Origin: Macrostomum lignano
Lineage: Eukaryota
Assembly (NCBI GenBank): GCA_002269645.1
Contig: NIVC01000841.1
Coordinates: 124,001 to 188,000 of the forward strand
Direction of reading: 5' to 3'
Length of the DNA: 64,000 nucleotides
A model generated the notes under the pieces. That model was not told the DNA's origin. It was given only the letters and a program-made list of their open reading frames with translations, and ran no database searches. This document shows positions 883 through 60,857 of the stretch, one piece after another; the first letter of the stretch is position 1, and each line of letters starts with the position of its first letter. A program made the position numbers and the translations under genes.

Positions 883-1314
883 TCAGATCTTCGGACACTC
901 GCCCTCATGCTTAACCTCAACCCCGGCAAGTCTAGCGTAGCATTCATTTGAGTAAGTACTTTCATCGACACCGCACACTGGCTGATAGACGTCCGGGCAC
1001 TGTTCAACGGCACACTCGCCAACATGTTGAATTTCAACTCCGGCTGACTTAGCAAAGCAATCATTTGGATACGTTTTGCCGTCCGATCCGCATACGGGCC
1101 GATAGATATTCAAGCACAATGAAATGCAAGGACCATTGTGACGAATTTCAACTCCGGCTAGTTCTGCATAGCAAGAATTCGGATAAGTGTTGTCATCGAC
1201 CCCGCAAACTGGACGATATTCTTCAGCGCACAGGTTTGGCGAAGCAAAAGTACAGCTTACTATGGCAAGAATCGCGCAGAACGCACAGACAAAAGGAGCG
1301 ACACTTGAAGACAT
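883..1314 (-). CDS. Secreted Kazal-type serine protease inhibitor, 3 tandem four-cysteine Kazal domains, single exon, 143 aa
   Basis: ATG at 1314 begins MSSSVAPFVCAFCAILAIVSCTFA (hydrophobic signal peptide). It is followed by three C-x7-CG(V/S)D-x-x-TY-x-N-x-C...G-x-C repeats (CAEEYRPVCGVDDNTYPNSC, CLNIYRPVCGSDGKTYPNDC, CPDVYQPVCGVDESTYSNEC). The ORF-track extension to 1413 is not ATG-initiated. Confidence 0.9.
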   Translation of the reverse strand: MSSSVAPFVCAFCAILAIVSCTFASPNLCAEEYRPVCGVDDNTYPNSCYAELAGVEIRHNGPCISLCLNIYRPVCGSDGKTYPNDCFAKSAGVEIQHVGECAVEQCPDVYQPVCGVDESTYSNECYARLAGVEVKHEGECPKI

Positions 1315-1661
1315 GTTAACTTGCTGTTCTTTGTTTATTCGCCGAATTCGATAGGCATAAAATAAGTCGAAGGAATACCAAATCACGTTTTTATACAACT
1401 CAGTATATGGCAATTCTTTCTCAGTAGCATTTTCTCAGCTTTATCAATCGCAGAAAACACACGTGGAAATTGCGTTGCCAATCTGTGTCCGTCACACCAG
1501 CTGGGCAAAGCAAACGTGTTGAAACCGTTCGGTGTTCCTGACAGACCATGCCGTAGCATAACAGCAAAACAACACAGGTTTTTTCACATTATCACACATT
1601 TCTGATACGAGCTAACATAATGGCCTATCGCGTTAAAGTACCCGATTATTGCTCACGAAAA

Positions 1662-11143: not shown

Positions 11144-11889
11144 TAGCTTTTTGCAGCCCATTTGGGCCCACGCGCATTGAATTCAATCCAAGATATGTTT
11201 GCCAATGTAACGGAGCTCCTGTCTATGGTAGCAAGGCTGGCACAGCTGCATTCAATCCGGTCCAACAAGCATCAATTTGGTCCATTTAGTTCATTTGCAG
11301 CTCAGTCCCAGAATTGTGGACCATATGCTAGGCTGTTGAACAAATGTCATTGGCTTGTGATCGAAGCACTCGACGGAGGTGAACACCCAAAGGACATTGC
11401 AAGGTTGCTGAATGTAAAAGAAAAGGTGGTTTACAGCATCCAGGAGCGCCTTGAAACTCTGCCGGCAGAGATTGCCTGCGAAAGGGTGGCAATCGCCAAG
11501 GAAAGTTGCTCGAGAGCCTCAGGTCCAACTGCTACTCGATGCAGTGGAGACGAACCCTTTGTTGACGTTTCAGAAAATGCAGCAGAAGTTGAGGGAACAG
11601 CTCCAGTTGGTTATCAGATTTCGACTATCAGCAGAGCTCTGGAAAAGCGACTGAAAATTGTTGGTAGAGACGCTGACATTCCAGCGGTGCGCAACAACCG
11701 CAGACTGTTGCGAGAAGGCAGGAGTTTGTCCAATGGCTCACGAGTGTTTGGACCAAATGGATGCTTGTTGGACCAAATCAAATGCCGCTGCGCCAGCCTT
11801 GCTACCATAGACAAAAGCTCTGTTACATTCGCAAACATATCTTGGATTAAATTAAATGCGCGCAAGCCCAAGTAGGCTGCAAAATGCTA
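11144..11889 (+). mobile_element. Non-autonomous Tc1/IS630-like DNA transposon, about 746 bp, with ~150-bp imperfect TIRs and TA target duplication
   Basis: TA|TAGCTTTTTGCAGCCCA...GGCTGCAAAATGCTA|TA. Interior encodes paired HTH remnants (LVIEALDGGEHPKDIARLLNVKEKVVYSIQERL; ISTISRAL) and no DDE domain. A second copy lies at 32521-34896. Confidence 0.8.
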
Positions 11890-12243: not shown

Positions 12244-15200
12244 TCAATTCTCAGCCAATCCAGCTGATTCCTCGTCATCGTCAGCATCTTGTTGACTAAT
12301 CAGTTCCTCATGAGAATCCTCATCCGAGCCAGACTCTTCTCCATCAGGCGTAGGCAGCAGCTCTTCAATATCCTCGTTATCGAAGTCTTCTTCATCAAAG
12401 TCGCTCTGCTGTGACGCGTCGCGACTGTTAGACTGTTGCAAACAGGTGGGGCACAGGTAGGAGTCGGCCAGCTCGTCAACAGAGCGGACTCCAACGCAGA
12501 TCCAATGGAACCACTGCTGGCATTGATCGCATTCCACCCAGTTCACCTGCATGAGCGATAGATTTCTTGTTGTATTTAATAATTCTTAAAGTTGTATTTT
12601 AGGAGATCTATAGGTTTTTTAAGGATGAGATTTTGAGAATATAGGTGAGAATTTTTAGTATAATGGATTTTGAGGATTTAGATACGATTTTGAGGATGTA
12701 AGTGAGCTTTGAGGATATACATAGGATTTGGAGGATGTAGGTGGGAGTTGAGGATGTAGGTGAGATTTTGAGGATGTAGATGGAATTTTGAGGATGTAGG
12801 TGAGATTTTGAGGATGTAGGTGAGATTTTGAGGATGTAGGTGAGATTTTGAGGATGTAGGGGAGATTTTGAGGATCTAGGTGAGATTTTGAGGATCTAGG
12901 TGAGATTTTGAGGATGTAGGTGGGATTTTGAGAATGTAGGGGAGATTTTGAGGATCTAGATCGGATTTTGAGGATGTAGGGGAGAGTTGGAGAATATGGG
13001 TGAGATTTTTGAATTTATGGGGACTTTTGAGAATTTAGATGAAATTTTAAAGATATGGGGGAGATTCTGAGAATCTAGGTGAGATTTTTAAGATTTAGGT
13101 CATTTTTTTCAGGATGTAAGCGAGATTTAGTAAATCTATGTAAGATTTAAATCTAAACGAGATAGACGGGATATTGGTATCTAGATGCGATAATGATGGC
13201 ATATGAGATACTACGAGTACGAATTTGCACCTGAGTTCCAGTCGGCTGGTGACACTTCACCGCTGCGCAGTCCTCGCTCCAGCCGCCTTTTCGACGCTTC
13301 TGCTGTTGCTGCTGTTGAGGTCGGGCTTGCTGTCGCTTGGAAGCTGAGGCCGAAGATGAAGCCACAGAAGCGGCAGCGGACGAGGCAGCATGAGATGCCG
13401 CAGGTTGAGTATAGTGCTTTCTACGCCTCTCGGCTGCCTGCAAGAAGACCGAACAGTGAATGCTTGATAGAGCCTTAGTAGCTTAGGGATTAGTAGCCTA
13501 AGGATCAGTGGCTTAGGGATTAGTAGTTTGGGTATTAGTGGCTTAGGGATCAGTAGCTTAGGGATTAGTAGCTTAGGGATTAGTAGCTTAGGGATTAGTA
13601 GCTTAGGGATTAGTAGCTTAGGGATTAGTAGCTTAGGGATTAGTAGCTTAGGGATTAGTAGCTTAGGGATTAGTAGCTTAGGGATTAGTAGCTTAGAGAT
13701 TAGTAGCTTAGGGATTAGTAGCTTAGGGATTAGTGGCTTAGGGATTAGTAGCTTAGGGATTAGTAGCTTAGGGATTAGTAGCTTAGGGATTAGTAGCTTA
13801 GGGATTAGTACCGTAAGGATTAGTAGCTTAGGGATTAGTAGCTTAGGGATTAGTGGCTTAGGGATGAATAGCTTAGAGATTTTTAGATTACGGATTAGTA
13901 GCTTAGGGATTAGTAGCTTAGAGCTTTGTAGATTACGGATTAGTAGCTTTGCTTAGGGATTAGTAAAATAGAGATTAGTAGCTTATGGATTAGTGTCTTA
14001 GGTATTAGCAACTCAGGAATTAGTTACCCTAGAGATTAGTGGCTTAGGGAATATTGGCTTCGGGATTAGTAGTTTAGGGATTTGCAGTTTATGCGAGAAT
14101 TGCTGATATATCAAGGCTTATGGGACGAATTGCTGAGATGACAGAAAGTGAGGCATTAGCAGCTTAGAGCATAAAACTGTCAGACTCACCGCCTCAATAG
14201 GAGTCCGGACTTTGCGCCGACGCTTATCAGCTGGAGCGGCATCTTTGTCGGCGTCGGCTGAACCAGCCGGTCGCTTAGCAACCGACACCACAGATGAGCT
14301 ACCAGGTTTGCGACCTCTTCTAGCGTGCTGCCTTTGCTGCTGCGGCTGCTGCTGCTGAGAAAGTACAAGATGTCCTTTTGTTTGTCGTTTTGCCAATTTT
14401 GACTTCGACGACGACGACGCTATAGACGTAGTAGACGCCGCCGACGGGAGCATCACGGGGCCGAGAGCGATGGCCGACGTCGAATACGCGTCAGACATGT
14501 CGTCGCCATCGTCATCGTCAGCGGCGGAGGCAGCGGCGCCTGCGGCCGTGGAGGCGACCGCTTTAGCCGAGGACTGCACAGAGGAGGAGTCCATAGCGTC
14601 GTCACCTTCGCTGCTGCTCTCTTCGTCGTTGTCATTGTCCTCGTTGTCGCTGTCAGCTCCTCGGCCGCAGGCAATAAGACCGGCTCCTCTGTCGTCGTCG
14701 CCAAACTCATCAACGTCAGCGTCGGGCGCGCTTGCCTGCAGCAGGTGCCACAGCCAGGTGGACTCCTCCATGGAGACTTCCAATAGGTCGCCTTCGAGCA
14801 TGGAGGACTCGAGTTGAGACCGGGCCGCCGGGCTCAGAGTCAGGCAAGGCCTACGGGCCGGCATTAAAGAGGTTGGCGAGGTCATGGAATCGCCGGCGCC
14901 GCTTGTCGACATTGTCGGAGGCGGCGAGATGCTCAGGCTGCTGCTGCCAGGACCAGCTGGGGCGGCAGCCGACGTAGTCGAGGCCGCCGCAGTGTTGCCA
15001 CCGCCTGATTGCGACGGCCCGCGAGGAAACAGCGGCGACTTTCGCGGCTTTCTAGACGACGAAGACTGCGCCGCCGCCGCTGCAGCCGCAGCTGCCGATG
15101 CCGCCGATGACGAAGTGGCAGCGGCAGCGGCGGCGGCAGCGGCAGCCGCATTAGCGGCACCCCGCTCAGCCAGGGTTAGGCCGCTATTAGCGCTAATTGC

Positions 15201-17779
15201 AGCCACGCTAGAGGCCATAGCAGCCTCGCCACCCGAGGTAACCATGGTGTTTAGCTGGCGCAACAGTTTATCAGGCAGCTGCAGTTTCATAGTTCTAGCC
15301 AAGCAGACTAGCGCCCGGCGCAACTCGGGACTGCTTAACAATAGGCAATGGGTCCGATCCTGCCAGGACATCGCACGCTCGGTTAGACACTGCAGAGCCA
15401 CCCCGGCTAGCAGAGGACACGGTAGGCGTTGCAGAGCCAGCAGCAAACTGAGAATGGTTTCAACCCGAGGCCGCCTGCCGCGCTCGCAGGCCTGGCACAG
15501 ATATTTCAGATCCCTGAGAGCGGCCCGCATTGCCGATTGGCCGGCGTTAGTCAGCGTCTTCGGCTTCAAATACTTGGGCAAAGTGACGCACTGGGCGTGG
15601 TACCAGTGCCGGCACAGTTCGCACTGCAGCATGAAGCTGTTGCTGGAATTGGAGCTGCGCTGACCGCAGATGCACGTGGATGCCAGGACTAGATCGTGGC
15701 CTTTGCGGTGTCTGTAAGTATTGCAAATCGATCATCAAATGTCAGTGATCGATACATCAAGCAACAAATCGATCATAAATATCGTGAATCTATACTGAAT
15801 ATCATAAATCGATACTGGATATCAGAAATCGATACTGAATATCATAAATCGATATTGAATATCATAAATCGATATTGAATATCATAAATCGATACTGGAT
15901 ATCATAAATTGATACTATATATATCATAAATCGATACTGAATATATAAATAGATACTGGAAATCAGAAATTGATACGAAATATCATAAATCGACAATGAG
16001 TATCATTAATCGACATTGGGTATTAAAAATCGATAATTCATATCATACATCAATATTGAATATCACAAACCGATACTAAATATAAAAAGTCGTAAAAAGT
16101 AATGAACAATTTGACACAAGCATACGAAAAGGCATAAGAATAAACTAATACTCTGACTCACCTAGCAGCCATCGCACTTTTCAGTTCTGTAGCGGCCAGC
16201 TCCTGATAGAGAGCCACCCTTTCAGCGTCGGTAATATCGTCCGAGAAACGGTCAACCGGCTCCAAAAAGTTCTGCTGCTGCTGTTGGGCCGACTGACCGC
16301 CGTTGCTGCTCTCTTCTTTGGCAGGAGCTTTCTTCGACACCGCGCCCTTCTTTGGACCGGAGCTCTGCCCGCCTTGACCGGCGTTTGGCTTCGTGTAGTC
16401 GCGTAAAAACGAGCGAGACGATCGGGGCAAAAGAACCTGTGCGTGATGAATTTTTTAGGGAAATTTTGTATGTGCATCTACAGTGGCTGGCCCAGCAACT
16501 GACACTCTGGGAGGCTGGCACAGCAACTGAGGATCTGAGAGGCTGGCCTAGCAACTGAGGATCTGGGAGGCTGACACAGCAACTGACACTCTGGGAGGCT
16601 GGCCCAACACTGAGGATCTGGGAGGCTGGCCCAGCAACTGACACTCTGGGAGGCTGACCTAGCAACTGAGGATCTGGGAGGCTGGCCCAGCAACTGAGGA
16701 TCTGGGAGGCTGACACAGCAACTGACACTCTGGGAGGCTGGCCCAACACTGAGGATCTGGGAGGCTGGCCCAGCAACTGACACTCTGGGAGGCTGACCTA
16801 GCAACTGAGGATCTGGGAGGCTGGCCTAGCAACTGAGGATCTGAGAGGCTGGCCTAACAACTGAGGATCTGGGAGGCTGGCCCAGCAACTGACACTCTGG
16901 GAGGCTGGCACAGCAACTGACACTCTGGGAGGCTGGCCCAGCAACTGAGGATGTGGGAGGCTGGCCCAGCAACTGACACTCTGGGAGGCTGGCACAGCAA
17001 CTGAGGATCTGGGAGGTAAGCCTTAAGAGTTCCTAGCCTAGCAACCAAGAATCTACAAGAGTTCCCAGCCTAGCAACCAAGGATCTACAAGAGTTCCCAG
17101 CCTAGCAACCAAGAATCTACAACAGTCCCCAGCCTAGCAACTGAGGATCTACAAGAGTTCCCAGCCTAGCAACCAAGGATCTACAAGAGTTCCCAGCCTA
17201 GCAACCGAGGATCTACAAGAGTTCCCAGCCTAGCAAACAAGTATCTACAAGAGGATCTACAAGAGTTCCCAGCCTAGCAACCGAGGATCTACAAGAGTTC
17301 CCAGCCTAGCAACTGAGGATCTACAAGAGTTCCCAGCCTAGCAACTGGGGATCTACAAGAGTTCCTAGCCTAGCAACCAAGGATCTACAAGAGTTCCCAG
17401 CCTAGCAACTGAGGATGTAGCACTAAAAACTCAAGCAGGCGTACCTGTATAAGCGACAGAGGAGAGTACTTCTTTAGAAAGTTCCGGGCAGTCCGATCTA
17501 GCCAGCCCTTAGCTTGGGCCACGTGATTTTCTAGCTCCGCCAGCTGCTCCAGCTTCACGCAATACTTGCGACCCTCATCTAGCAGTCGCTCCAGCGTTCC
17601 CAGAGTCGGATAGGCTACCGCGCTACCCTGCCCAGTTTCCATAGCAACCGTCTCTGACCATTGTCGAATTCGAGCTAACAGATCGGCGGCTGATTTCACC
17701 GAAGTCAAACGAAGCGGCAGTCGCTCGGCGTCGTCAACCAGTTTTTGCAGATCGTCAAGGTCCAGTAGGGAGGCCTGCA

Positions 17780-17816
<37 letters not shown>

Positions 17817-20800
17817 CGAACTAGAAGAAGAAGACTGCTGCTGCTGCTGCTGGCGCTGCATCTTTTGCAGCCGTTGACGTGTCTCCAGGCAGTTGCGTGC
17901 TCTGCGTGTACAGAGAAATGACTGGGATTTGTAAATTTTCAATTGTTAGGTAGAGACTAAGGTGTTCCAGAGTAGGGTGTTACAGGTGTTAGGAGTAGGT
18001 GTTAGACACTATGGTAAGAGACTATTTAAAAATAAAATAATTATTATTAGATGCTTAGAGATAGCTTTATATGCTGTTTATAAGTAGCTTTAGAATTTTT
18101 TAAAATGTTAATCTCTAAGCTGTTTAAGGGTGGGTTTAGAGACTGTTTATAAGTAAGATTAAAAGATGTTCATGAGTAGGTTAATAAGCTAAAAGTGTGT
18201 TTAGGTTCACAGATGCATATGAGTAGGTTTACAGGATGTTTATGAGTAGGTTTACAGGATGTTTGTGAGTAGGTTTACAGGTTGTTTATGAGTAGGTTTA
18301 CAGGATGTTTATGAGTAGGTTTACAGGATGATTATGAGTGGTTGTACAGTATGTTTATAAAAAGGTTTACATGATGTTTATGAGTTAGTTTACAGAATGT
18401 TTATGAGTAGGTTTACAGGATGTTTATAAGTCGGCTAACAGGATGTTTATAAGCAGGTTTACAGGGTGTTTAAAAACGGCTGCACAGGATGTTTATGAAC
18501 AGGTTTCCAGACTGTTTTTGGGTAGACTAATAGGTTAAGGGTGTGTTTATAGGCTGCTTTATGAGTAGGTTTAGAAGATGTTTATGAGTAGATTAGTTGG
18601 ATAATGGTGTGTTTATAGGCTGTTTATTATCGATAGGTTAGATGAGTATAAAACCTGTGTAAAAATCAGCTGTTTATGAATACGTTTACAAGACTGTTTA
18701 GAAGGCTTTTTATTTAAAAAAGAACCCACGAGTATAATGTACCAGAATGGTTGCAAAACTACACAAAATTACAACTTACTTAGCCTCCAAATCCTGACCG
18801 GTTCTCAGCAAATTCAACAGCCCTGCCAGAGCTGCTTCTGACTTAGACGTCTGCTCTCGCAGCGATGAACCTTTGGCGCATAACTGCGACAACTCGCTTG
18901 GAAACAGCTTTCTTCTATTAGTAGAAGACTTCTTAACAGTAGATTTCTCTTCGCCATCATCTTGCTCTTTGTTATCAGCTTCGAGTTCGTTTAAAATCGA
19001 TTGAGCCTCGGTTAAAAACAGCTGACGCTCGTACACAGCGGCTAGCCAGGGCCAAGCGTCCATAGCAACCGGCAGTCGACTAGCCGCTTCGGTTGCTAAG
19101 GAAGCTACAATGTCAAAATCCGGTTCCACGCTAGGATCGGCTTCGAAGTTCTGCATCAGAGCCTGGCAACGGGAGCGCCAACTGTCGACCTGAGTTCGAA
19201 GACCGGCAAAACCGGATTCCTCATGGTCCGATAGTCGACACGGCAGCCGGTCTAACCGGCGACACACGGCGACAAAGCTGGCCTCGTCGATTTTGTTGAC
19301 GCATCGGCCGACCCGGCCGCCGCATCTGGGAAACCGCAGCCGTTTGCGCAGCTGGCGAACTCGAACTGTTTCGCTAGGCGACCCCTCGTCGGAGTCTTCC
19401 TGCTCCGCTTCGATTGGTTCGTCTTCTTTTTTAATAGCAACAGTAGGCGACTCTTTCTCTTCGACAATTTCTTCTTCGGCAATGTCTTCTTTAACGAAAG
19501 AAGATGATGCGGTGGCAGCAACAGTGGAGGCTGCCGCGGCAGTCAGCAGGGCGCTGACAACTTGTTGGGCTCGCCGACAGGAACGCACCCGATTGCGTAA
19601 CCGAGCCAAAGGTGCGCAACTAACCGGGGACAGGTGCAATTCGGCAACCCCGCGCCAGGCTAGCAACTCAAGCTCGGATAGTTCCGGCTTATTATCATTG
19701 TCAGACTCTTCCGAATGCCCATTGTCCGGCTTCTTAGCTATGCTAGATTTCCTACTGATAGAATCTACCGTAGATCGCCACTCATTGTACTGATCGCGTA
19801 GGGAGATTAGTTGAATTCGAGATTGACTGAGCAAATCGTTTTGCGCAACTGCGGCTTCTGTTTGTTGTTGTTGTTGCTGTTGTTCATCAGAGCTCGACTT
19901 TAGCAGAGACTGTGGATTGATCATAGATTATACAGTATGAGCGCAGATGCGTTCACAATACTTTCTTGTGTCTAAAACAATATTATTTGAGTCTGTAGTA
20001 CAGCCTTAGAGAATATATCGGTTGAGTCTGAAGGATTAATTCTGTCCAGACAGGATTGGTTGTGTACAGAGATGAGTCATTGTGTTAAGAGAAGACTGGT
20101 TGTGTCCAGTATAATTGGTTGTGTCCAGAGATAATTAGTTGTGTCCAGAGATAATTAGTTGTGTCCAGAGAAGATTAGTTGTGTCCAGAGATAATTAGTT
20201 GTGTCCAGAGATAATTAGTTCTGTCCAAAGAAAATTAGTTGTGTCCAGAGATAATTAGTTGTGTCCAGATATAATTAGTTGTGTCCAGAGATAATTAGTT
20301 GTGTCCAGAGAAAATTAGTTGTGTCCAGATATAATTAGTTGTGTCCAGAGATAATTAGTTGTGTTTAGAGATAATTAGTTGTGTCCAGATATAATTAGTT
20401 GTGTCCAGAGAAGATTAGTTGTGTCCAGAGATAATTAGTTGTGTCCAGATATAATTAGTTGTGTCCAGAGATAATTAGTTGTGTCCAGATATAATTAGTT
20501 GTGTCCAGAGAAGATTAGTTGTGTCCAGAGATAATTAGTTCTGTCCAAAGAAAATTAGTTGTGTCCAGAGAAAATTAGTTGTGTCCAGAGATAATTAGTT
20601 GTGTCCAGAGATAATTAGTTGTGTCCAGAGATAATTAGTTGTGTCCAGAGATAATTAGTTGTGTCCAGAGATAATTAGTTGTGTCCAGAGATAATTAGTT
20701 GTGTCCAGAGATAATTAGTTGTGTCCAGAGATAATTAGTTGTGTCCAGAGATAATTAGTTGTGTCCAGAGAAGATTAGTTGTGTCCAGAGATAATTAGTT

Positions 20801-22935
20801 ATGTCCAGATATAATTAGCTGTGTCCAGATATAATTAATTGTGTCCAGATATAATTAGTTGTGTCCAGAGATAATTAGTTGTGTCCAGAGATAATTAGTT
20901 GTGTCCGGAGATAATTAGTTGTGTCCAGATATAATTAGTTGTGTCCAGAGATAATTAGTTGTGTCCATATATAATTAGTTGTGTCCAGAGATAATTAGTT
21001 GTGTCCAGAGATAATTAGTTGTGTCCAGAGATAATTAATTGTGTCCAGAGAAGATTAGTTGTGTCCAAAGAAAATTAGTTGTGTCCAAAGAAAATTAGTT
21101 GTGTCCAGAGATAATTAGTTGTGTCCAGAGAAGATTAGTTGTGTCCAGAGATAATTAGTTGTGTCCAGAGATAATTAGTTGTGTCCAGATATAATTAGTT
21201 GTGTCCAGAGAAGATTAGTTGTGTCCAGAGATAATTAGTTGTGTCCAGAGATAATTAATTGTGTCCAGAGAAGCTTGGTTGTGTCGAAAAAAAAGATCGG
21301 TTGTATCCAGATAAGAATAGTTGTGTCCAGAGAACAGTTGTCGATAAAATAAAGCGCCTGTAACTTGAAAATGAAACACCCCCAACCCAACCCTAATCTC
21401 TCACCTCAATCTCATTGAGTAGCAACTCAGCTAGATCAGCAGACAGCAACAGTCGTGTCTGTTGCTGCTGTCTCGATGCATTATTAACTTCAACAGTAGC
21501 TAAAGACTCCTCAACCACAGCTTGAGCTGCTTCTAGCACAGCCCTACGCCGAACTTCTTGAGGCATGCCAGCAGTCAGAGCTCCCGGCAGCCAGTTGAAT
21601 GGACAAAACCGAGCCAATTCTAAAAAATTAACGCCGCAGTCAAGCCAAGCATACCTGGCGCCAGGCATCAGCACAACAAACTCGCCAGGTCTTTGTTCTA
21701 GACGCCATCCAACATTTCCATTGTCATTGGAAGCCAGACAATACCAAATCCTGGCCTCACCCCAGTGCAGGTAGGACACTGAGCCTGACCAGTCACACTG
21801 CCAGGCACCGGCTCCATTGCCAGTTGAAGACAAAAATCTTGAACCGATTTGACAGCGCCACCAGTCATTTGGCGACTCAGTGCTTGCAATATTGATAACG
21901 CCTGAACAGTCAGATAAACTGTTGGCTAGTTCCCAGCCGTCTTCTTCTACTAGAGGCAATTGCTTGCCGTACTCAACTGTTGAAGATGAAGACGCTAAAA
22001 ATGAGGAACACCAATATGCTTTTTCACTCAGTTTTTCTATTTACATAGTATTCATGTTTTAAGAATGAATACTGCACCATTCCTTCAGATCCTTCAGGTG
22101 AGCTAGTGCACCTTCCCATTCCTTCCCGATCCTTCATGTGAGCTAGTGCACCTTCCCATTCCTTCAAGATCCTTCAGGTGAGCTAGTGCACCTTCCCATT
22201 CCTTCCAGATCCTTCAGGTGAGCTAGTGCACCTTCCCATTCCTTCCAGATCCTTCAGGTGAGCTAGTGCACCTTCCCATTCCTTCCAGATCCTTCAGGTG
22301 AGCTAGTGCACCTTCCCATTCCTTCCAGATCCTTCAGGTGAGCTAGTGCACCTTCCCATTCCTTCAGGTGAGCTAGTGCACCTTCCCATTCCTTCAAGAT
22401 CCTTCAGGTGAGCTAGTGCACCTTCCTTCCAAATCCTTCAGATGGGCTAGTGCAATATTATTCCATAATGACACACTAGAGTCCTATTCGCTTCAGATGT
22501 AGTAAACTTACCCGACTCAAAGTGGCTCCAGAACTCAGCCTCAACAGCTGCAGGTGTCATGGAAAACTGCCCACACTCAGTTGCCTCATTGCGGGCAACA
22601 AACTCAGCCAGATGGCATTCTGCAGCCAGGCCCAGTAAATCATTACCACCAATTCTTTGCCTAGTAGGACAAAAGTTAAACAAATCAATGTCCAAACAGA
22701 ATGGCAGCAGACATCCGCTGAAGTTGGGTTCAACCTCACTATTCTCAAAATTAGAGGATGCTACTGATTTTTGTTCAGGTGGACACAGCTTGCATATCAG
22801 ACAACCAGTACCCAAGGCAGACAGTTTCTGTTTAACAATTTCAGTTACATAACCAGCCAGGTCATCCAACTCATCTGGTGTGGCAATGAAAACTGGACCC
22901 AAATTCAGCTTTGATAAGCGAGTAGAGAAACTCAT
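12244..22935 (-). CDS. KDM5: KDM5 (JARID1/lid)-family protein, divergent: JmjN, degenerate JmjC, PLU-1, PHD2, PHD3; about 1635 aa. Exons 22512-22935, 21405-21994, 18780-19909, 17445-17901, 16162-16436, 14190-15711, 13231-13437, 12244-12546
   Basis: JmjN-like [13 protein letters not shown]...ICKLCPP; AVEAEFW; TVEYG; [14 protein letters not shown]; [11 protein letters not shown]...FCPFNWLP; YNEW; [15 protein letters not shown]; PHD2 [24 protein letters not shown] followed by [11 protein letters not shown]; PHD3 [29 protein letters not shown]. The 8 exons sum to 4908 nt (divisible by 3) and all introns are GT-AG with consistent phase. Confidence 0.9.
12660..13140. repeat. 20-bp minisatellite (gagattttgaggatgtaggt)n
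   Basis: Direct read, last KDM5 intron. Confidence 0.9.
13470..14085. repeat. 15-bp minisatellite (gggattagtagctta)n
   Basis: Direct read; fills the KDM5 intron between 13437 and 14190. Confidence 0.9.
15745..16080. repeat. About 22-bp minisatellite (atatcataaatcgatactga)n
   Basis: Direct read, KDM5 intron. Confidence 0.85.
16483..17420. repeat. Two related adjacent minisatellites: (ggctggcccagcaactgaggatctggga)n, then (tctacaagagttcccagcctagcaaccaagga)n
   Basis: Direct read; both share the tagcaactgaggatct core; fills KDM5 intron 16437-17444. Confidence 0.9.
18165..18700. repeat. About 22-bp minisatellite (gtttatgagtaggtttacaggat)n
   Basis: Direct read, KDM5 intron. Confidence 0.85.
20095..21335. 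repeat. 20-bp minisatellite (gtgtccagagataattagtt)n, about 60 units
   Basis: Direct read, KDM5 intron 19910-21404. Confidence 0.95.
22070..22448. repeat. About 39-bp minisatellite (ccttcaggtgagctagtgcaccttcccattccttccagat)n
   Basis: About 9 units in KDM5 intron 21995-22511. Confidence 0.9.
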
Positions 22936-30995: not shown

Positions 30996-33900
30996 ATGTT
31001 GTACAGTTTCTGGTGCAACCTAAGTAGCACCAGGATGGCTTTGCTGTCAATTAATGTTGCCTTTCTTCTAGCCGGCATCGCTTTGAGAGTCGCCATTCAG
31101 TTGACAATCAACTCGCCAGTGGTGTCCAAGATCAACCTGCTGGATTCGTTGGACGCGTGCTCGAATTCTCTGATTCCGATATCGATTGTTGGTTTCGCTG
31201 GTGCCTGGATGAAGAATCACACTGTACTGTTTATGTACCTGTTGTGCACGTTCCCCCTCTGTCTAATTCAGTTCTCAGTCTCGTGCAGCTGCTTAGCAGC
31301 CGATTCGAATCAGATCAAAACCATTATTGAGGCCGGCTGGAACCGGGCCGGCGATGCAAAGCGAGCAGAGGCTCAGGTAAATTCGCATCAATAAAACTTT
31401 GATGGCCTGCTATTTTTTGAAGTACATAACAAGGACAACTAAAGCAACGTACGAGCGTATGTAGAGGACGCGACACTCCCGTTTCATGGAAAAATACACT
31501 ACGGAGACAGGAAGTTTTCAGCTTTTCAGCACAAAAATAGTTATTGCTTTCGATAGGAGGCAGACCAAATGTTCATCTTTTGATATGCTGTGCATTTCTT
31601 ATAACTATATTGATATTCATAAAGCTTTTTGTTCGGAGAAATACTATTCTATGTTAGTTTTTCCTGTACCATTAAAATCGCACGGCTCAGCTCCATTGGT
31701 TTTATGAATCTATTTAATCATTCTTAGCTGACAGTGTAACAATATGTGTAAAAGAGATGATAAAATAGATTCATAAAACCAAAGAGTCGAGCTATGCCAT
31801 TTATTTCTAATATTTTTAGGCACAGGACATATGCAATTGTACATAATTAATAAAAATTAACATAGAATTCTAATTTTCTGAACAAAAAGCTTTATGAATA
31901 TCGATAGAGCAATAAGAAAGACACAACATATCAAAAGATGTACATTAGATCTGCCTCCTATCGAAAGCAATAACAATTTTTGTGCTGAAAAACTGAAAAC
32001 TTCCTATCTCCGTAGTGTATTTTTCGGCGAAAAGTGGCCTTCAAGACATTTTCCAAAGATTTCAAGTGTTGCATCCTTATACTTTAGTAGTCCTTGGTGC
32101 ATCACCAAAACAAGAACTACATGTTTTTTGTTAAAAGTTTAGTAAAATTATGGTTTGTTGATGTTCTCGACTTAATTTGCATTCAACCGTCGAAGACATG
32201 CGCGCGCACTTGTCGGCGCTTCGGCAACTCCGTCACTCCGTCTTTCGTCAGTTCCTGAAGCGCGCCCCCTACGACGCTATAACATTACCAGCTCCATTGT
32301 TTCTTTCCAGACTTTCGAAACGAACTAGTCCCTCCGGTTAAGTCTAAGTCATCATTTTTTCAGATCTCTGTCCGAAGTGACGCAATTTTCTGGCGTGGAG
32401 AGAGTGAAGATTTATGGCCTAGAGATCGGGATTATTAAAGCTTCCCTATGTTTTCCACTGCGTGTTTCGGAGTGGAATTATTCTACTTTTCGTTGAGTGT
32501 ATTTTATATCGCTTTTAATATAGCATTTTGCAGCCCATTTGGGCTTACGCGCATTTAATTTAATCCAAGATATGTTTGCGAATGTAACGGAGCTTTTGTC
32601 TATGGTAGCAAGGCTGGCGCAGCGGCATTTAATTTGGTCCAAAAGGCATCCATTTGGTCCAAAAACTCGTGAGCCATTGGACAAACTCCTGCCTTCTCGC
32701 AACAGTCTGCAGGTTGTTGCGCACCGCTGGAATGTCAGCGTCTCTACCAAAAGTTTTCAGTTGCTTTTCCAGAGCTCTGCTGATAGTCGAAATCTGATAA
32801 CCAACTGGAGCTGTTCCCTCAACTTCTGCTGCATTTTCTGAAACGTCAACAAAGGGTTCGTCTCCACTGCATCGAGTAGCAGTTGGACCCACAGAATATA
32901 GACAGAATGCCCGATCGGCTGTCGCGGGATGTTTGGAAATTAATATGCAAACAAACTACTTATGTGGTGAAGCGGAGCAGTAGTTATGAAAATTCGATAT
33001 GCATATATATATATTTATAATATATGTAGACTCTGCGTATGATTCTATAAACTTAGATACTGCTTCAGAATTTAAAATTAACAGGTTTGGCAGTGCCCAA
33101 ATTGGAATAAAACCGTAGACGTTGTCACCAACCATTTATTTGAAACAAATAACATATTTGAAACATTTTAATTATTATTATTAACAATTCACCAATTTAC
33201 TCCAATTTGTATTCGCTGCTCCAGTCCAGTGCCGCTATAATCAAATTCAATGCAATGCTTATGCAGAGCATTTCGCATGTTCTTTAAGCAATGAGGAACA
33301 TCGATGAAAGCTGGAATCAGTGACTGAACTCCGTCTACTTCGATGCACACGGAAGGGCGATCAGGATTCGCCCCTAACTGTCGCAAGCAATGCCACTGAG
33401 TAGACTCCTGGTCACACACGATGCCGGAAAGCGTGAGTCCCATTCTTTTAACTGCAGCAACAGACTCAGAGAGGATCTGTTTGAATCTCAGTGCCCCAGG
33501 TGCGTGGTGGATGAGATAGTGCCCAATCGGCTGCTTCCATCTTGAGCAAGTGCCTTTGAGCCATACAGCGACAAACTCATCAGCAGTAGTCGCAGTTCGA
33601 CCCCCAGCGGACGTGCCACAGTCTTCGAAGCCGATGATCTGGTCCGCGTTCTTATCGTAGCGAAGCGAAGGCCTCACAGACAAGCTCTGTACGCGACAGA
33701 CACTTTCGTCCTCTCAATTTCGCCGAATCTGCAGCTGAGACGACTGGTTCTCCATCAAAACACTGCACATTGTCCTCAGTGCGACCTTCTCTCGGCCTCC
33801 TCTCCTTCGCAAGTGGAGAAACTCTTACTCTCGGACGCGAGCGTCGGTAAGGTTCTGCTGTTTCTTTGTACAGCTGGAGCGTCGGGTATGCCGTGGGCAT

Positions 33901-35364
33901 CAGTCTGACCCCAGGCTCATGTCTCTGGTCAGGACACACGTGGGGAACATGCTGTCGGGAAAATGGTGGCTGCACACGACAGCGTTCTTCCACCTCGCTT
34001 CGTTTTTCTTGCCCAAGAGGTCTGATCGGAAAATGCGCCGAGCCCAATCTTCACACCTACAGTACTTAGGTTTCAGTGAATGACTGTGGCAATAGCAGGC
34101 AAGTCACGCATGTACATGAACATACCTTTCACGGTTTGCTGTGAAACGATAAAATCTCGTTTGTGCAGGACATTTGTTTGCGTAATTCTGGCAGCCATAA
34201 GCAGCGCATTGCCTTCTTGATGCTGTCATAATGTTAAAGTTGTCTCTGTTAATGCCTACGTTGCTGCCAATCACTGCCTTATTAATGTCAGTAGCAGCAG
34301 CCGCTGCCACAGAATATACTGTATATTCTATGGCATCGGCTGCTGCTACTCGCAGTCTCAGTCGTCTATGGCAGAACCTTTCCGAGCCGCATACGAGTAA
34401 GTATAAGTGACTACTATCTTTCTTCACCACAAAAGTAGCTAAATATGCAAATACTTTTTGCGGCAGATTTTTCTGCGAGAGGGCTGATCGGCCATTCTGT
34501 CTATATTCTGTGGTTGGACCTGAGGCTCTCGAGCAACTTTCCTTGGCGATTGCCACCCTTTCGCAGGCAATCTCTGCCGGCAGAGTTTCAAGGCGCTCCT
34601 GGATGCTGTAAACCACCTTTTCTTTTACATTCAGCAACCTTGCAATGTCCTTTGGGTGTTCACCTCCGTCGAGTGCTTCGATCACAAGCCAATGACATTT
34701 GTTCAACAGCCTAGCATATGGTCCACAATTGGGACTGAGCTGCAAATGAACTAAATGGACCAAATTGATGCTTGTTGGACCAAATTAAATGCCGCTGCGC
34801 CAGCCTTGCTACCATAGACAAAAGCTCCGTTACATTGACAAACATATCTTGGATTAAATTCAATGCGCGTAAGCCCAAATGGGCTGCAAAAAGCTATAGT
34901 GAATCTAAGCAAAATAGTTATTAATATTCAGTGCTTTCACTTTACTCAACAGTAGCATGATACGAGTGGTATGCGCGTGAGACGCAACACAAAACAATTC
35001 TTCGAATCAAATTTTGCAGACAAAATACAAATGCTGCGGCCTGTACCATTCCGGGTACGTCAGCGATCCGCTGGGGCATCCACCCTGCTCGGAGCAGGAC
35101 TGCTGCACTCAGGCTAAAGTGCAGCATCTCTGCTGCATAAATAAATTAAATAAATCGACTATTTCGAGCGAAGAAATTCAAAGCTGTCCCTGTACTGACT
35201 TCTGTATGGAGAAAATTAGTGATAAATTTACGGTAATAGTCTGTTCTCTTGGCACTTCGGGCCTGCTGCTTTCCTTTGCCGAAGTTGCTGCCATTGTGCT
35301 GTCAATAGCCATGCGAGATCTCATGAATTTGAACTTTGATAGAGCCAGGGCCTTGTATCGGTAG
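30996..35364 (+). CDS. Tetraspanin, TSPAN13/31-like, 241 aa. Exons 30996-31376 and 35020-35364
   Basis: LFMYLL...IQFSVSCSCLA...IEAGWN (TSPAN13 VQFSVSCACLA..LEVGWN); EC2 CCG motif; hydrophobic TM4 (GLLLSFAEVAAIVLSI); phase-0 CAG|GTAAAT and ttttgcag| junctions. Confidence 0.85.
31430..32096. mobile_element. Foldback/MITE-like palindromic element, about 670 bp, in the tetraspanin intron
   Basis: 31430-31730 and 31760-32096 are imperfect reverse complements (ttttatgaatctattt / aaatagattcataaaa at the centre; caaggac / gtccttg at the ends). Confidence 0.7.
32521..34896 (-). mobile_element. Second copy of the long-TIR Tc1-like element in reverse orientation, split by a P-element insertion
   Basis: TA|TAGCATTTTGCAGCCC...GGGCTGCAAAAAGCTA|TA. 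Segments 32521-32889 and 34521-34896 together reconstitute the 11144-11889 element. Confidence 0.85.
32890..34512 (-). mobile_element. P-element superfamily transposon, internally deleted (1623 bp), with THAP and transposase remnants
   Basis: 8-bp TSD GTTGGACC at 32882-32889 and 34513-34520; TIR CACAGAATATAGACAGAATG. THAP C2CH: MTASRRQCAAYGC..RFYRF..W...CSHHF..PTAYPT, with a 69-nt GT-AG intron (34057-34125) and a frameshift. Transposase core: YDKNADQIIGFEDCG, WKQPIGHY, GIVCDQ, DVPHCLKNMRN. Confidence 0.9.

Positions 35365-38205: not shown

Positions 38206-41617
<3,412 letters not shown>

Positions 41618-48441: not shown

Positions 48442-60857
<12,416 letters not shown>

What the first reader, a model, noticed from the sequence alone, without database searches (positions are those of the whole stretch)
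12244..22935. KDM5-family pseudo-demethylase: no iron ligands, ARID, PHD1 or zf-C5HC2, but PHD2 and PHD3 intact
Seen in sequence: the reading frame is intact (about 1635 aa). The segment matching KDM5 [24 protein letters not shown] reads [25 protein letters not shown], with no His-x-Glu. FPRAYHSGFN reads [10 protein letters not shown] (distal His to Tyr), the 2OG-binding Lys is Arg, and about 35 aa of the JmjC loop are missing. Within exon 1, JmjN (..PTRQRIG) runs straight into the pre-JmjC helix (..AVEAEFW), so the loss of ARID and PHD1 cannot be a missed exon. No Cys-rich zinc-finger exon is visible between ..LLNEIE and ..YNEW. PHD3 retains its tryptophans (NWVEC, QWFH). Established: H483/E485/H571 of KDM5A are required for demethylation, and PHD3 reads H3K4me3. 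Inference: this may be a reader-only scaffold that binds or shields H3K4me3, or a natural antagonist of a catalytic paralogue. I know of no description of this architecture in animals.
Basis: partly seen in the sequence, partly recalled or inferred. Interest (0 to 1): 0.72.

Follow-up and report, generated by a model that had tools for sequence, protein, structure and literature searches.

The report
Catalytically dead KDM5 paralogue in flatworm
The flatworm Macrostomum lignano carries, next to two normal-looking KDM5 histone demethylase genes, an old and still intact third copy that has lost everything needed to remove methyl groups but has kept the parts that recognise methylated histone H3; this makes it a likely natural "reader-only" version of the enzyme, though nobody has yet tested it.

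Summary
Window 22935-12244 (minus strand) holds an 8-exon, all GT-AG, 1635-codon open gene. Its product is KDM5-derived. It has a PLU-1 domain and two complete C4HC3 PHD fingers. It gives no Pfam hit to JmjN, ARID or zf-C5HC2, and the JmjC domain is only a remnant: no HxE, distal His is Tyr, 2OG Lys is Arg, and about 37 residues are deleted. The window is Macrostomum lignano. No ARID, PHD1 or C5HC2 coding sequence exists anywhere in the 64 kb.

New here: the genome also encodes a complete canonical KDM5 (Mlig012680, "B") and a catalytic copy that lacks PHD2 and PHD3 (Mlig015885, "A"). The window gene ("C") is an old duplicate closest to B (synonymous sites saturated, two shared intron positions). 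Its N-terminal half has diverged about twice as far from outgroups as B's. Its C-terminal reader half is as conserved as B's.

The open frame could not have survived that much divergence without selection, so C is a maintained pseudo-enzyme. It most likely acts as an H3K4me3-reading scaffold or a competitor of the catalytic paralogues.

Expression, current constraint on the N-terminus and histone binding are untested. I class it as a new variant of a known kind, of moderate interest.

The parts
12244..22935 (-). Whole coding region of the pseudo-KDM5 gene ('C'), 1635 aa. Exons: E1 22935-22512, E2 21994-21405, E3 19909-18780, E4 17901-17445, E5 16436-16162, E6 15711-14190, E7 13437-13231, E8 12546-12244 (stop 12246-12244).
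   Evidence: all introns GT-AG and phases consistent. The E1/E2 junction is also used in UniRef A0A1I8H5U3 (P0110, 100% identical). The E5/E6 and E7/E8 junctions are used in A0A1I8HTA7 (P0120). The E2/E3 and E4/E5 introns sit at the same positions as introns of paralogue B.
22648..22908 (-). Degenerate JmjN with its C-terminal extension (aa 10-96), carrying a ~20-aa insertion. It runs directly into the pre-JmjC helix, with no ARID or PHD1.
   Evidence: phmmer alignment to KDM5B chains, tblastn, no Pfam JmjN hit.
22513..22620 (-). Pre-JmjC helical segment (aa 106-141, ..[21 protein letters not shown]), in the same exon as JmjN.
21600..21977 (-). JmjC remnant (aa 148-273). The HxE position reads A205-W-Q207-C-D209 (21806-21792). 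Arg223 replaces the 2OG Lys (21752-21750). A 37-residue deletion falls after D232 (junction near 21722). Tyr256 replaces the distal His (21653-21651).
   Evidence: AF2 model: beta core at pLDDT 70-87, with best PDB matches to KDM5B/C catalytic domains.
21405..21599 (-). Helical segment after JmjC (aa 274-338, diverged equivalent of KDM5_C-hel), ending at ..LLNEIE. The zf-C5HC2 that follows in canonical KDM5 is absent.
   Evidence: The intron after it is shared with paralogue B.
17448..19276 (-). PLU-1 domain (aa 550-866; spans intron 3), with acidic and polyQ insertions.
   Evidence: Pfam PF08429, 75.5 bits, E 5.6e-21.
15486..15674 (-). PHD2 (aa 972-1034), C-x-C-x14-C-x2-C-x4-H-x2-C-x30-C-x2-C.
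   Evidence: Pfam PHD, pattern search, 57% identical to paralogue B.
15252..15479 (-). Conserved helical block after PHD2 (aa 1037-1112; ..[34 protein letters not shown]..).
   Evidence: 65% identical to B with dN/dS about 0.18. As similar to outgroups as B is.
14727..14840 (-). Conserved C-terminal motif (aa 1250-1287; [35 protein letters not shown]).
   Evidence: 69% identical to B.
12442..13269 (-). PHD3 (aa 1523-1570; spans intron 7). Complete C4HC3 pattern and both cage tryptophans (W1538 in VNWVEC, W1547 in QQWFH).
   Evidence: Pfam PHD, pattern search, alignment.
12247..12405 (-). Acidic C-terminal tail (aa 1583-1635; 25 of 53 residues are D or E). Paralogue B has a basic tail at the same place.
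20035..21333 (.). 20-bp minisatellite (65 copies) filling intron 2, at the place where the C5HC2 zinc-finger coding sequence lies in paralogue B.

Best explanation
The gene is a lineage-specific, catalytically dead paralogue of the KDM5 (JARID1/Lid) H3K4 demethylase of Macrostomum lignano.

Shown here:
- It arose by an old DNA-level duplication of a complete KDM5 resembling today's Mlig012680.
- It then lost ARID, PHD1, the C5HC2 zinc finger, a 37-residue JmjC insert, both iron-binding histidines and several 2OG contacts.
- Its PLU-1, PHD2, post-PHD2 helices and PHD3 stayed as conserved as in the canonical paralogue.
- The 1635-codon frame stayed open throughout.

Inferred:
- The protein is made.
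- Its PHD3 brings it to H3K4me3-marked chromatin, and it cannot erase the mark.
- There it acts as a non-enzymatic KDM5: a scaffold for KDM5 partners, or a competitor that shields H3K4me3 from the two catalytic paralogues.
- The shrunken JmjN-JmjC core serves at most as a structural module.
For: - Intact 8-exon gene.
- KDM5 homology with PLU-1 and two PHD fingers, but no JmjN, ARID or zf-C5HC2, and only a sub-threshold JmjC fragment.
- Active-site substitutions and the deletion. H218 is the only His in aa 148-300.
- No hidden exons in the 64 kb. Intron 2 is a minisatellite.
- Organism identified as M. lignano.
- Canonical paralogues B and A exist with intact HIEDH...H.
- C is closest to B: 37% identity over 611 aa at E 3e-71, many shared lineage-specific motifs and two identical intron positions.
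- Synonymous sites against B are saturated (pS 0.67-0.84), while dN/dS is about 0.2-0.4 in the C-terminal blocks.
- Relative rates: N-terminal identity to five outgroups is 28-31% for C and 57-63% for B. The C-terminal blocks are equal for C and B, for example 42% and 40%.
- The amount of divergence could not accumulate in a dead 4.9-kb frame without stops or frameshifts (my calculation).
- In the second C-terminal copy, no differences fall in PHD2 or the following helices.
- Precedents: the catalytically inactive KDM5B-NTT isoform raises bulk H3K4 methylation when overexpressed (PMC10281864), and Drosophila Kdm5/Lid has demethylase-independent functions (PMC4975413, listed).
Against: - No RNA evidence was obtainable. 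No exact products were on record in the contig collection.
- I found no GenBank protein for this gene. However, that annotation excluded transcripts overlapping repeat annotations (PMC5730564), so this absence is uninformative.
- The window copy and copy P0003 differ at 12 of 338 N-terminal residues. That gives dN of about 0.015, at or above the dS of 0.011-0.013 measured for the A and B homeolog pairs. If these copies are the same age, the N-terminal part is evolving near neutrality.
- The C-terminal copies differ at 14 of 616 residues, mostly in low-complexity linkers.
- H3K4me3 binding is inferred only from conserved residues.
Confidence: 0.55

Rival explanations
1. Specifically a competitive antagonist. 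C occupies H3K4me3 nucleosomes or shared partner proteins in place of the catalytic paralogues A and B, and so protects the mark, acting as a dominant-negative regulator. This is a sub-case of the best explanation, contrasted with an independent scaffold role.
For: - PHD2 and PHD3 of C and B are 55-57% identical, with identical ligand and cage positions.
- Catalytic paralogues co-exist in the genome.
- Overexpressed inactive KDM5B-NTT increases bulk H3K4 methylation (PMC10281864).
Against: Nothing here bears on co-expression, stoichiometry or chromatin occupancy. C has also gained an acidic tail and acidic and polyQ inserts that B lacks, which points to functions of its own.
Confidence: 0.2
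2. A duplicate that was functional for most of its history but has recently lost constraint and is now decaying, or is kept only as an open frame with no role for the N-terminal half.
For: - Amino-acid divergence between recent C copies (2.3-3.6%) is 5-10 times that of the A and B copy pairs (0.35-0.45%). For the N-terminal part it is about what neutrality predicts at dS of about 0.012.
- No transcript-based protein record was found.
Against: - All three N-terminal and both C-terminal predicted copies are open.
- The window copy has no stop or frameshift in 4905 nt and 14 canonical splice sites. At roughly 600 disabling events per substitution per site for a frame of this length, loss of function older than about 0.005 substitutions per site is unlikely (my estimate).
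- PHD2 and the helical block show no changes between copies.
- The age of the compared copies is unknown.
- The GenBank absence is explained by the repeat filter.
Confidence: 0.2
3. The protein still has oxygenase or demethylase activity through a non-canonical metal site.
For: The AF2 model keeps a JmjC-like beta core. Asp209 lies near the HxE position in one alignment.
Against: - There is only one His in aa 148-300, and it is the structural His of YLHWG.
- The distal His is Tyr, the 2OG Lys is Arg, and the Tyr of the WxYVG strand is Gln.
- 37 residues of the JmjC insert and the C5HC2 finger are gone.
- The AF2 model was guided by a KDM5 alignment, so fold resemblance is partly built in.
Confidence: 0.03
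4. Artefact of the gene model: further exons, or trans-splicing to another locus, supply ARID, PHD1, HxE or the zinc finger.
For: No RNA evidence was available, and M. lignano does use SL trans-splicing (PMC5730564).
Against: - JmjN and the pre-JmjC helix are in one exon, and the degenerate HxE and His positions lie inside exon 2 itself.
- tblastn with two canonical KDM5s finds no ARID, PHD1 or C5HC2 in 64 kb.
- Intron 2 is almost entirely minisatellite.
- The N-terminus aligns from residue ~10 with KDM5 N-termini.
Confidence: 0.02

Closest known systems
KDM5/JARID1/Lid H3K4me2/3 demethylases; nearest relative is M. lignano Mlig012680 (PAA67014.1, 1641 aa)
   Same: Common descent. They share JmjN-like, pre-JmjC, JmjC C-terminal strands, PLU-1, PHD2, post-PHD2 helices, the LLEV motif and PHD3, plus two intron positions and many lineage-specific motifs.
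   Different: C has no ARID, PHD1 or zf-C5HC2, none of the three iron ligands, Lys to Arg at the 2OG site and a 37-residue JmjC deletion. It has an acidic instead of basic C-terminal tail, and polyQ, polyA and acidic insertions.
JARID2 (Jumonji), the classical catalytically inactive member of the JARID group
   Same: A JmjN/JmjC protein of the same superfamily branch that lacks the iron and 2OG residues and acts non-enzymatically on chromatin.
   Different: JARID2 keeps ARID and zf-C5HC2, lacks PLU-1 and PHD2/PHD3, and works with PRC2. C matches JARID2 chains only at E about 1e-3, against 3e-12 for KDM5B. C is an independent, much younger loss inside the KDM5 clade.
KDM5B-NTT, a truncated catalytically inactive isoform of human KDM5B (PMC10281864)
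   Same: A KDM5 product without catalytic activity that keeps the C-terminal half. Its overexpression raises bulk H3K4 methylation and derepresses genes. This is the behaviour predicted for C.
   Different: NTT is an isoform of a catalytic gene, made from an alternative start. It is not a separate, fixed gene with mutated ligands and deleted domains.
Engineered 'linked JmjN-JmjC' KDM5A/KDM5B crystallisation constructs (e.g. PDB 5E6H, 5A1F)
   Same: JmjN is joined directly to JmjC without ARID-PHD1. These are the best sequence and fold matches of the N-terminal half of C.
   Different: Those constructs keep HxE...H and, to my knowledge, are catalytically active in vitro. C has lost the ligands.
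M. lignano Mlig015885 (PAA72229.1, 1425 aa), paralogue 'A'
   Same: Another KDM5 duplicate in the same genome with a partial domain set.
   Different: It shows the mirror-image loss. It has JmjN, ARID, PHD1, an intact JmjC, C-hel, zf-C5HC2 and PLU-1, but no PHD2 (deleted inside a continuous exon) and no PHD3.

Membership tests
KDM5/JARID1 demethylases | JmjN domain | tested here: inconclusive
   No Pfam JmjN hit even at E<=1. phmmer and tblastn do align aa 12-96 to the JmjN of KDM5B, P0001 and P0004, so a diverged remnant is present.
KDM5/JARID1 demethylases | ARID DNA-binding domain | tested here: not met
   No Pfam hit. No tblastn match anywhere in the window. Both flanks of its position lie in one exon.
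KDM5/JARID1 demethylases | PHD1 between ARID and JmjC | tested here: not met
   MAFFT's placement of aa 45-90 against PHD1 is an artefact. The same residues align to the JmjN extension, and they lack the C4HC3 pattern.
KDM5/JARID1 demethylases | JmjC domain with the Fe(II) triad HxE...H and the 2OG-binding Lys | tested here: not met
   Pfam JmjC matches only profile positions 77-111, at 22.1 bits against a 24-bit cut-off. The first His is Ala or Gln, the Glu is Gln or Asp (depending on the alignment), the distal His is Tyr256, the Lys is Arg223, and 37 residues are deleted.
KDM5/JARID1 demethylases | zf-C5HC2 after the JmjC helical domain | tested here: not met
KDM5/JARID1 demethylases | PLU-1 domain | tested here: met
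   PF08429, 75.5 bits, E 5.6e-21, aa 550-866.
KDM5/JARID1 demethylases | C-terminal PHD2 and PHD3 (the latter with an aromatic cage for H3K4me3) | tested here: met
   PF00628, 45.5 bits in 2 stretches. Both C4HC3 patterns are complete and both Trp are present. Binding itself was not tested.
KDM5/JARID1 demethylases | H3K4me2/3 demethylase activity | not testable with these tools
   Predicted absent from the missing ligands. Needs an enzyme assay.
KDM5/JARID1 demethylases | Descent from a KDM5 gene (homology) | tested here: met
   The best relatives in 1.84 billion representatives are KDM5 proteins, topped by M. lignano KDM5s. Intron positions are shared with B.
JARID2 | JmjN-ARID-JmjC(inactive)-zf-C5HC2 architecture and orthology to Jumonji | tested here: not met
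   No ARID or zinc finger. JARID2 chains match at E about 1e-3, against 2.7e-12 for KDM5B.

The most novel reading that the evidence does not exclude
M. lignano has split the eraser and reader halves of KDM5 into separate genes while also keeping an intact copy. Paralogue A (Mlig015885) is an eraser without PHD2 and PHD3. Paralogue C (this gene) is a PHD2/PHD3 reader without ARID, PHD1, zinc finger or catalysis. Paralogue B (Mlig012680) is complete. If all three are expressed and C binds H3K4me3, the animal is a natural separation-of-function series for KDM5. C would then tune H3K4me3 turnover by competing with B and A, for example in neoblasts or germline. M. lignano can be manipulated by RNAi and transgenesis.
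Probability: 0.3. Interest if true: 0.6.

Novelty: new variant of a known kind. Interest (0 to 1): 0.45.

Why it matters
Non-enzymatic roles of KDM5 proteins are well documented. So far they are studied with engineered point mutants or with isoforms of catalytic genes. A gene that evolution itself has stripped of ARID, PHD1, the zinc finger and the active site, while holding PLU-1, PHD2 and PHD3 at the same conservation as the full enzyme, shows which half of KDM5 can stand alone. It also offers a natural reagent for testing reader-only or antagonist functions.

Together with the mirror-image paralogue A, it is a clear example of complementary domain loss after duplication in a chromatin regulator. 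It occurs in a flatworm model where RNAi, in situ hybridisation and transgenesis are routine.

The public protein predictions that I found cover this gene only as fragments (341, 286, 643 and 620 aa), so its architecture is not visible in them.

Tried and rejected
1. The full-length protein search was swamped by polyQ and polyA words and returned only two distant KDM5s. I re-ran it with the N-terminal part and with a low-complexity-free concatenate.

2. I looked for DNA or transcripts of this gene or its copies in the contig collection. P0003, the E6 and E3 ORFs and the neighbouring Kazal ORF are not on record. The spliced model was not accepted. As a result I have no RNA evidence, no codon-level dN/dS between C copies, and no placement of the window in the GenBank assembly.

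3. My first idea was strict two-way subfunctionalisation between A and C. I modified it when the complete paralogue B turned up.

4. I first read the absence of a GenBank (PAA) protein as a sign of no expression. I rejected this because that annotation dropped transcripts overlapping repeat annotations.

5. No orthologues in other species were found. The exhaustive search shows nothing between the M. lignano cluster and E 3e-10, and the word search found nothing at 60-90% identity. Cross-species conservation could therefore not be tested.

6. Synteny between the C and B loci: none seen. The neighbours differ.

7. Literature searches for a flatworm or Macrostomum KDM5 description, or for a KDM5 pseudo-enzyme, found nothing specific.

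8. The regular-expression screen for HxE among the hits was badly designed, and I ignored it.

Full report
OBSERVATION. Six-frame inspection and splice-site reading of the minus strand between 23000 and 12200 give a coherent 8-exon gene:
- E1 22935-22512
- E2 21994-21405
- E3 19909-18780
- E4 17901-17445
- E5 16436-16162
- E6 15711-14190
- E7 13437-13231
- E8 12546-12244

Every intron is GT..AG and all phases match. Public predictions support some junctions: E1/E2 (P0110/P0003), and E5/E6 and E7/E8 (P0120). P0120 and P0121 use an earlier donor inside E6, so that junction needs RNA evidence. It does not affect any domain.

ORGANISM. The N-terminal 316 aa hit only UniRef entries of the free-living flatworm Macrostomum lignano. 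One cluster member, A0A1I8H5U3 (P0110), is 100% identical to E1+E2 of the window. A0A1I8HTA7 (P0120) differs at 1 of 643 residues. The window is therefore M. lignano. These public predictions are fragments (341, 286, 643 and 620 aa), auto-named 'JmjC domain-containing' and 'PHD-type domain-containing'. I found no single record with the full architecture.

DOMAINS AND RESIDUES. Pfam on the full model gives:
- PLU-1 at 75.5 bits.
- PHD at 45.5 bits, in two stretches.
- A JmjC fragment covering only profile positions 77-111, at 22.1 bits (cut-off 24).
- Nothing for JmjN, ARID, KDM5_C-hel or zf-C5HC2.

phmmer against PDB chains aligns three islands to KDM5B: the JmjN extension with the pre-JmjC helix, [19 protein letters not shown], and [41 protein letters not shown]. 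Together with MAFFT, this shows:
- The first iron His is Ala or Gln, and the Glu is Gln or Asp, depending on gap placement. H218, the structural His of YLHWG, is the only His in aa 148-300, so a 2-His-1-carboxylate site is impossible.
- The distal His is Tyr256.
- The Lys of GEPKTWY is Arg223.
- The Tyr of the W-x-Y-V-G strand is Gln.
- 37 alignment columns between ..CLASND and NGNVGW.. are deleted.

JmjN-like sequence (to ..PTRQRIG, aa 96) and ..AVEAEFW (aa 130-136) lie in the single exon E1. PHD2 (aa 972-1034) and PHD3 (aa 1523-1570) have complete C4HC3 patterns. PHD3 keeps W1538 and W1547. To my knowledge, the equivalent residues in KDM5A form the H3K4me3 cage.

NO HIDDEN EXONS. I ran tblastn of Procambarus KDM5A (P0001) and of the canonical M. 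lignano KDM5 (P0004) against all 64 kb at E<=1. It finds the JmjN, JmjC, PLU-1, PHD2-helical and PHD3 pieces, but nothing for ARID, PHD1 or zf-C5HC2. Intron 2, where the zinc finger should be, is 1495 bp, of which 1299 bp is a 20-bp minisatellite.

PARALOGUES. An exhaustive HMMER search of 1.84 billion representatives with P0003 found nothing between its own cluster and E 3e-10. The top distant hit and one further hit are M. lignano proteins.
- 'A' is Mlig015885 (PAA72229.1, 1425 aa; three gene copies). It has JmjN, ARID, PHD1, a full JmjC with CWHIEDH...PRAYHAGFN, C-hel, zf-C5HC2 and PLU-1, but only one PHD. PHD2 is deleted inside a continuous last exon. No PHD3 is found within 10 kb downstream.
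- 'B' is Mlig012680 (PAA67014.1, 1641 aa). It is a complete KDM5, including PHD2 and PHD3.

ORIGIN OF C.
- C is closest to B: 37% identity over 611 aa at E 3e-71, against E 2e-30 for the best non-Macrostomum KDM5.
- C and B share motifs absent from outgroups: LPKYLKP and RAALRxLKYLC inside PHD2, VLLPRSxxSF, [12 protein letters not shown], QVNWVxCD and YHWxCVGVRS.
- Two of C's seven introns are at exactly B's positions: after ..LLNEIE / ..LLDEIK, and at ..SLIQ|VLLPRS. This argues for a DNA-level duplication rather than retroposition.
- Nei-Gojobori counts against B show saturated synonymous sites (pS 0.67-0.84). The duplication is therefore old, far older than the recent polyploidy, whose A and B copy pairs have dS 0.011-0.013.
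- I could not date the duplication against other flatworms, because none were retrievable.

SELECTION. Relative-rate comparison with five outgroups gives these identities:

| Region | C | B | A |
|---|---|---|---|
| JmjN-JmjC half | 28-31% | 57-63% | 55-61% |
| PLU-1 | 18-27% | 18-25% | lower than B in most comparisons |
| PHD2 + helices | 32-42% | 29-43% | lower than B |
| LLEV motif | 29-41% | 28-42% | similar to or lower than B |
| PHD3 | 35-43% | 34-39% | absent |

C equals B in every C-terminal block.

dN for the N-terminal half against B is about 0.8. Most of this lies on the C branch, since B stays close to the outgroups. A dead 4.9-kb frame would acquire roughly 600 disabling changes per substitution per site (my estimate: about 4-5% of substitutions create stops, plus frameshifting indels). 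That amount of change can therefore only have accumulated while the frame was under selection. In other words, the pseudo-enzyme state has been maintained as a coding gene.

There is a caveat. The only recent comparison available is protein-level.
- Window against P0003: 12 differences in 338 aa.
- Window against P0121: 14 differences in 616 aa. None fall in PHD2 or the following helices. Two fall in the LLEV region and the rest in low-complexity linkers.
- The A and B pairs are 99.55-99.65% identical.

If the C copies are as young as the A and B pairs, the N-terminal part is now near neutral (omega about 1.3, wide interval). The structured C-terminal blocks would be at about 0.4, which is not significant. 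The age of the copies is unknown, so this stays open.

STRUCTURE. I ran AlphaFold2 on P0110 with a 50-sequence KDM5 alignment. It gives mean pLDDT 61 and pTM 0.62. The beta core (aa 187-273) has blocks at 70-87, and aa 40-104 is disordered. Foldseek's best PDB matches are KDM5B and KDM5C catalytic-domain constructs (TM about 0.5 normalised to the query, E about 5e-10). This is compatible with a shrunken JmjN/JmjC fold. It is partly circular, because the alignment consisted of KDM5s.

MECHANISM (inference). With no iron triad the protein cannot demethylate. With PLU-1, PHD2, the conserved helices and a cage-competent PHD3 held at canonical conservation, the most economical reading is a non-enzymatic KDM5. 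It would be recruited to H3K4me3 chromatin and would act as a scaffold for KDM5 partners or as a competitor that shields the mark from B and A.

Precedents:
- The inactive human KDM5B-NTT isoform raises bulk H3K4 methylation and derepresses genes when overexpressed (PMC10281864).
- Drosophila Kdm5/Lid has demethylase-independent roles (PMC4975413 and bioRxiv 10.1101/297804, listed).
- Engineered linked JmjN-JmjC constructs without ARID-PHD1 exist and are the best matches of C's N-terminus (PDB 5E6H, 5A1F). Loss of ARID-PHD1 alone would therefore not explain inactivity; the ligand losses do.

Features private to C suggest added functions that I cannot specify: an acidic tail directly after PHD3 (25 D/E in 53 residues, where B's tail is basic), and acidic and polyQ inserts in PLU-1.

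EXPRESSION. Not verified. No GenBank protein for C appeared in the searches. However, the GenBank annotation of Mlig_3_7 excluded transcripts overlapping repeat annotations (PMC5730564). This gene has a minisatellite in every intron and coding microsatellites, so its absence there is uninformative.

COMPARISON AND NOVELTY. C is a KDM5 by descent but fails five of the family's defining features: ARID, PHD1, catalytic JmjC, zf-C5HC2, and JmjN at Pfam level. It works like known JmjC pseudo-enzymes such as JARID2 and like inactive KDM5 isoforms, but it is not a JARID2 orthologue. Searches of the paper library found no description of it or of a comparable fixed KDM5 pseudo-demethylase. I rate it a new variant of a known kind. 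Interest is moderate, raised by the mirror-image paralogue A and by the experimental tractability of M. lignano, and lowered by the missing expression and binding data and by the generally duplication-rich genome.

Noticed in passing
L001 10001-16994 (GCA_002269645.1 NIVC01001103.1), protein P0004 / PAA72229.1: The M. lignano KDM5 paralogue Mlig015885 shows the mirror-image loss. All catalytic-side domains are intact, but PHD2 is deleted within a continuous last exon and PHD3 is absent (none within 10 kb downstream). Together with the window gene, this looks like complementary domain loss around an intact third paralogue (Mlig012680, L002).
   Followed up: partly
window 12666-13128, 13475-14082, 15766-16084, 16485-17416, 18202-18591, 20035-21333, 22077-22465: Each of the seven introns of the gene is largely filled by its own minisatellite, with unit lengths of 15, 20, 20, 28/32, 23, 20 and 40 bp. 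Five of these introns have no counterpart in paralogue B. The arrays may be linked to intron gain or growth, or to the loss of the zinc-finger coding segment at intron 2.
   Followed up: partly
window 58220-58690 (-) and 49012-50753 (-): Exons of a nuclear receptor gene. One exon encodes a zf-C4 DNA-binding domain ([36 protein letters not shown]; from memory, NR2E3/FAX-1-like). Others encode ligand-binding-domain pieces, separated by a long polyQ/polyA/His-rich region.
   Followed up: partly
window 883-1413 (-): ORF with a signal-peptide-like start and three Kazal-type serine protease inhibitor domains (Pfam Kazal_1/Kazal_2, E about 1e-20).
   Followed up: partly
window 11162-11875 (+) and 34104-34763 (-); 33189-33683 (-): Two inverted copies of an ORF share an identical stretch of about 80 aa with a weak HTH_29 match. 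One copy lies only about 370 bp beyond the 3' end of the KDM5-like gene. Next to the second copy is a TNP-like (P-element-type) transposase RNase H N-terminal domain. These are probably fragments of one DNA transposon family.
   Followed up: partly
window 40510-41617 (+) and 51756-52640 (-): Two long arrays of about 0.9 kb each read as the same ...LSIYLSIY... peptide repeat on opposite strands. They are therefore the same short tandem repeat in inverted orientation, flanking the nuclear-receptor ligand-binding exons.
   Followed up: no
L005 (Logan SRR31628403 contig, 1009 bp): A 275-aa ORF is 90% identical to the JmjC region of paralogue A. It presumably comes from another Macrostomum species or strain. 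No equivalent relative of the pseudo-KDM5 was seen in the protein collections.
   Followed up: no
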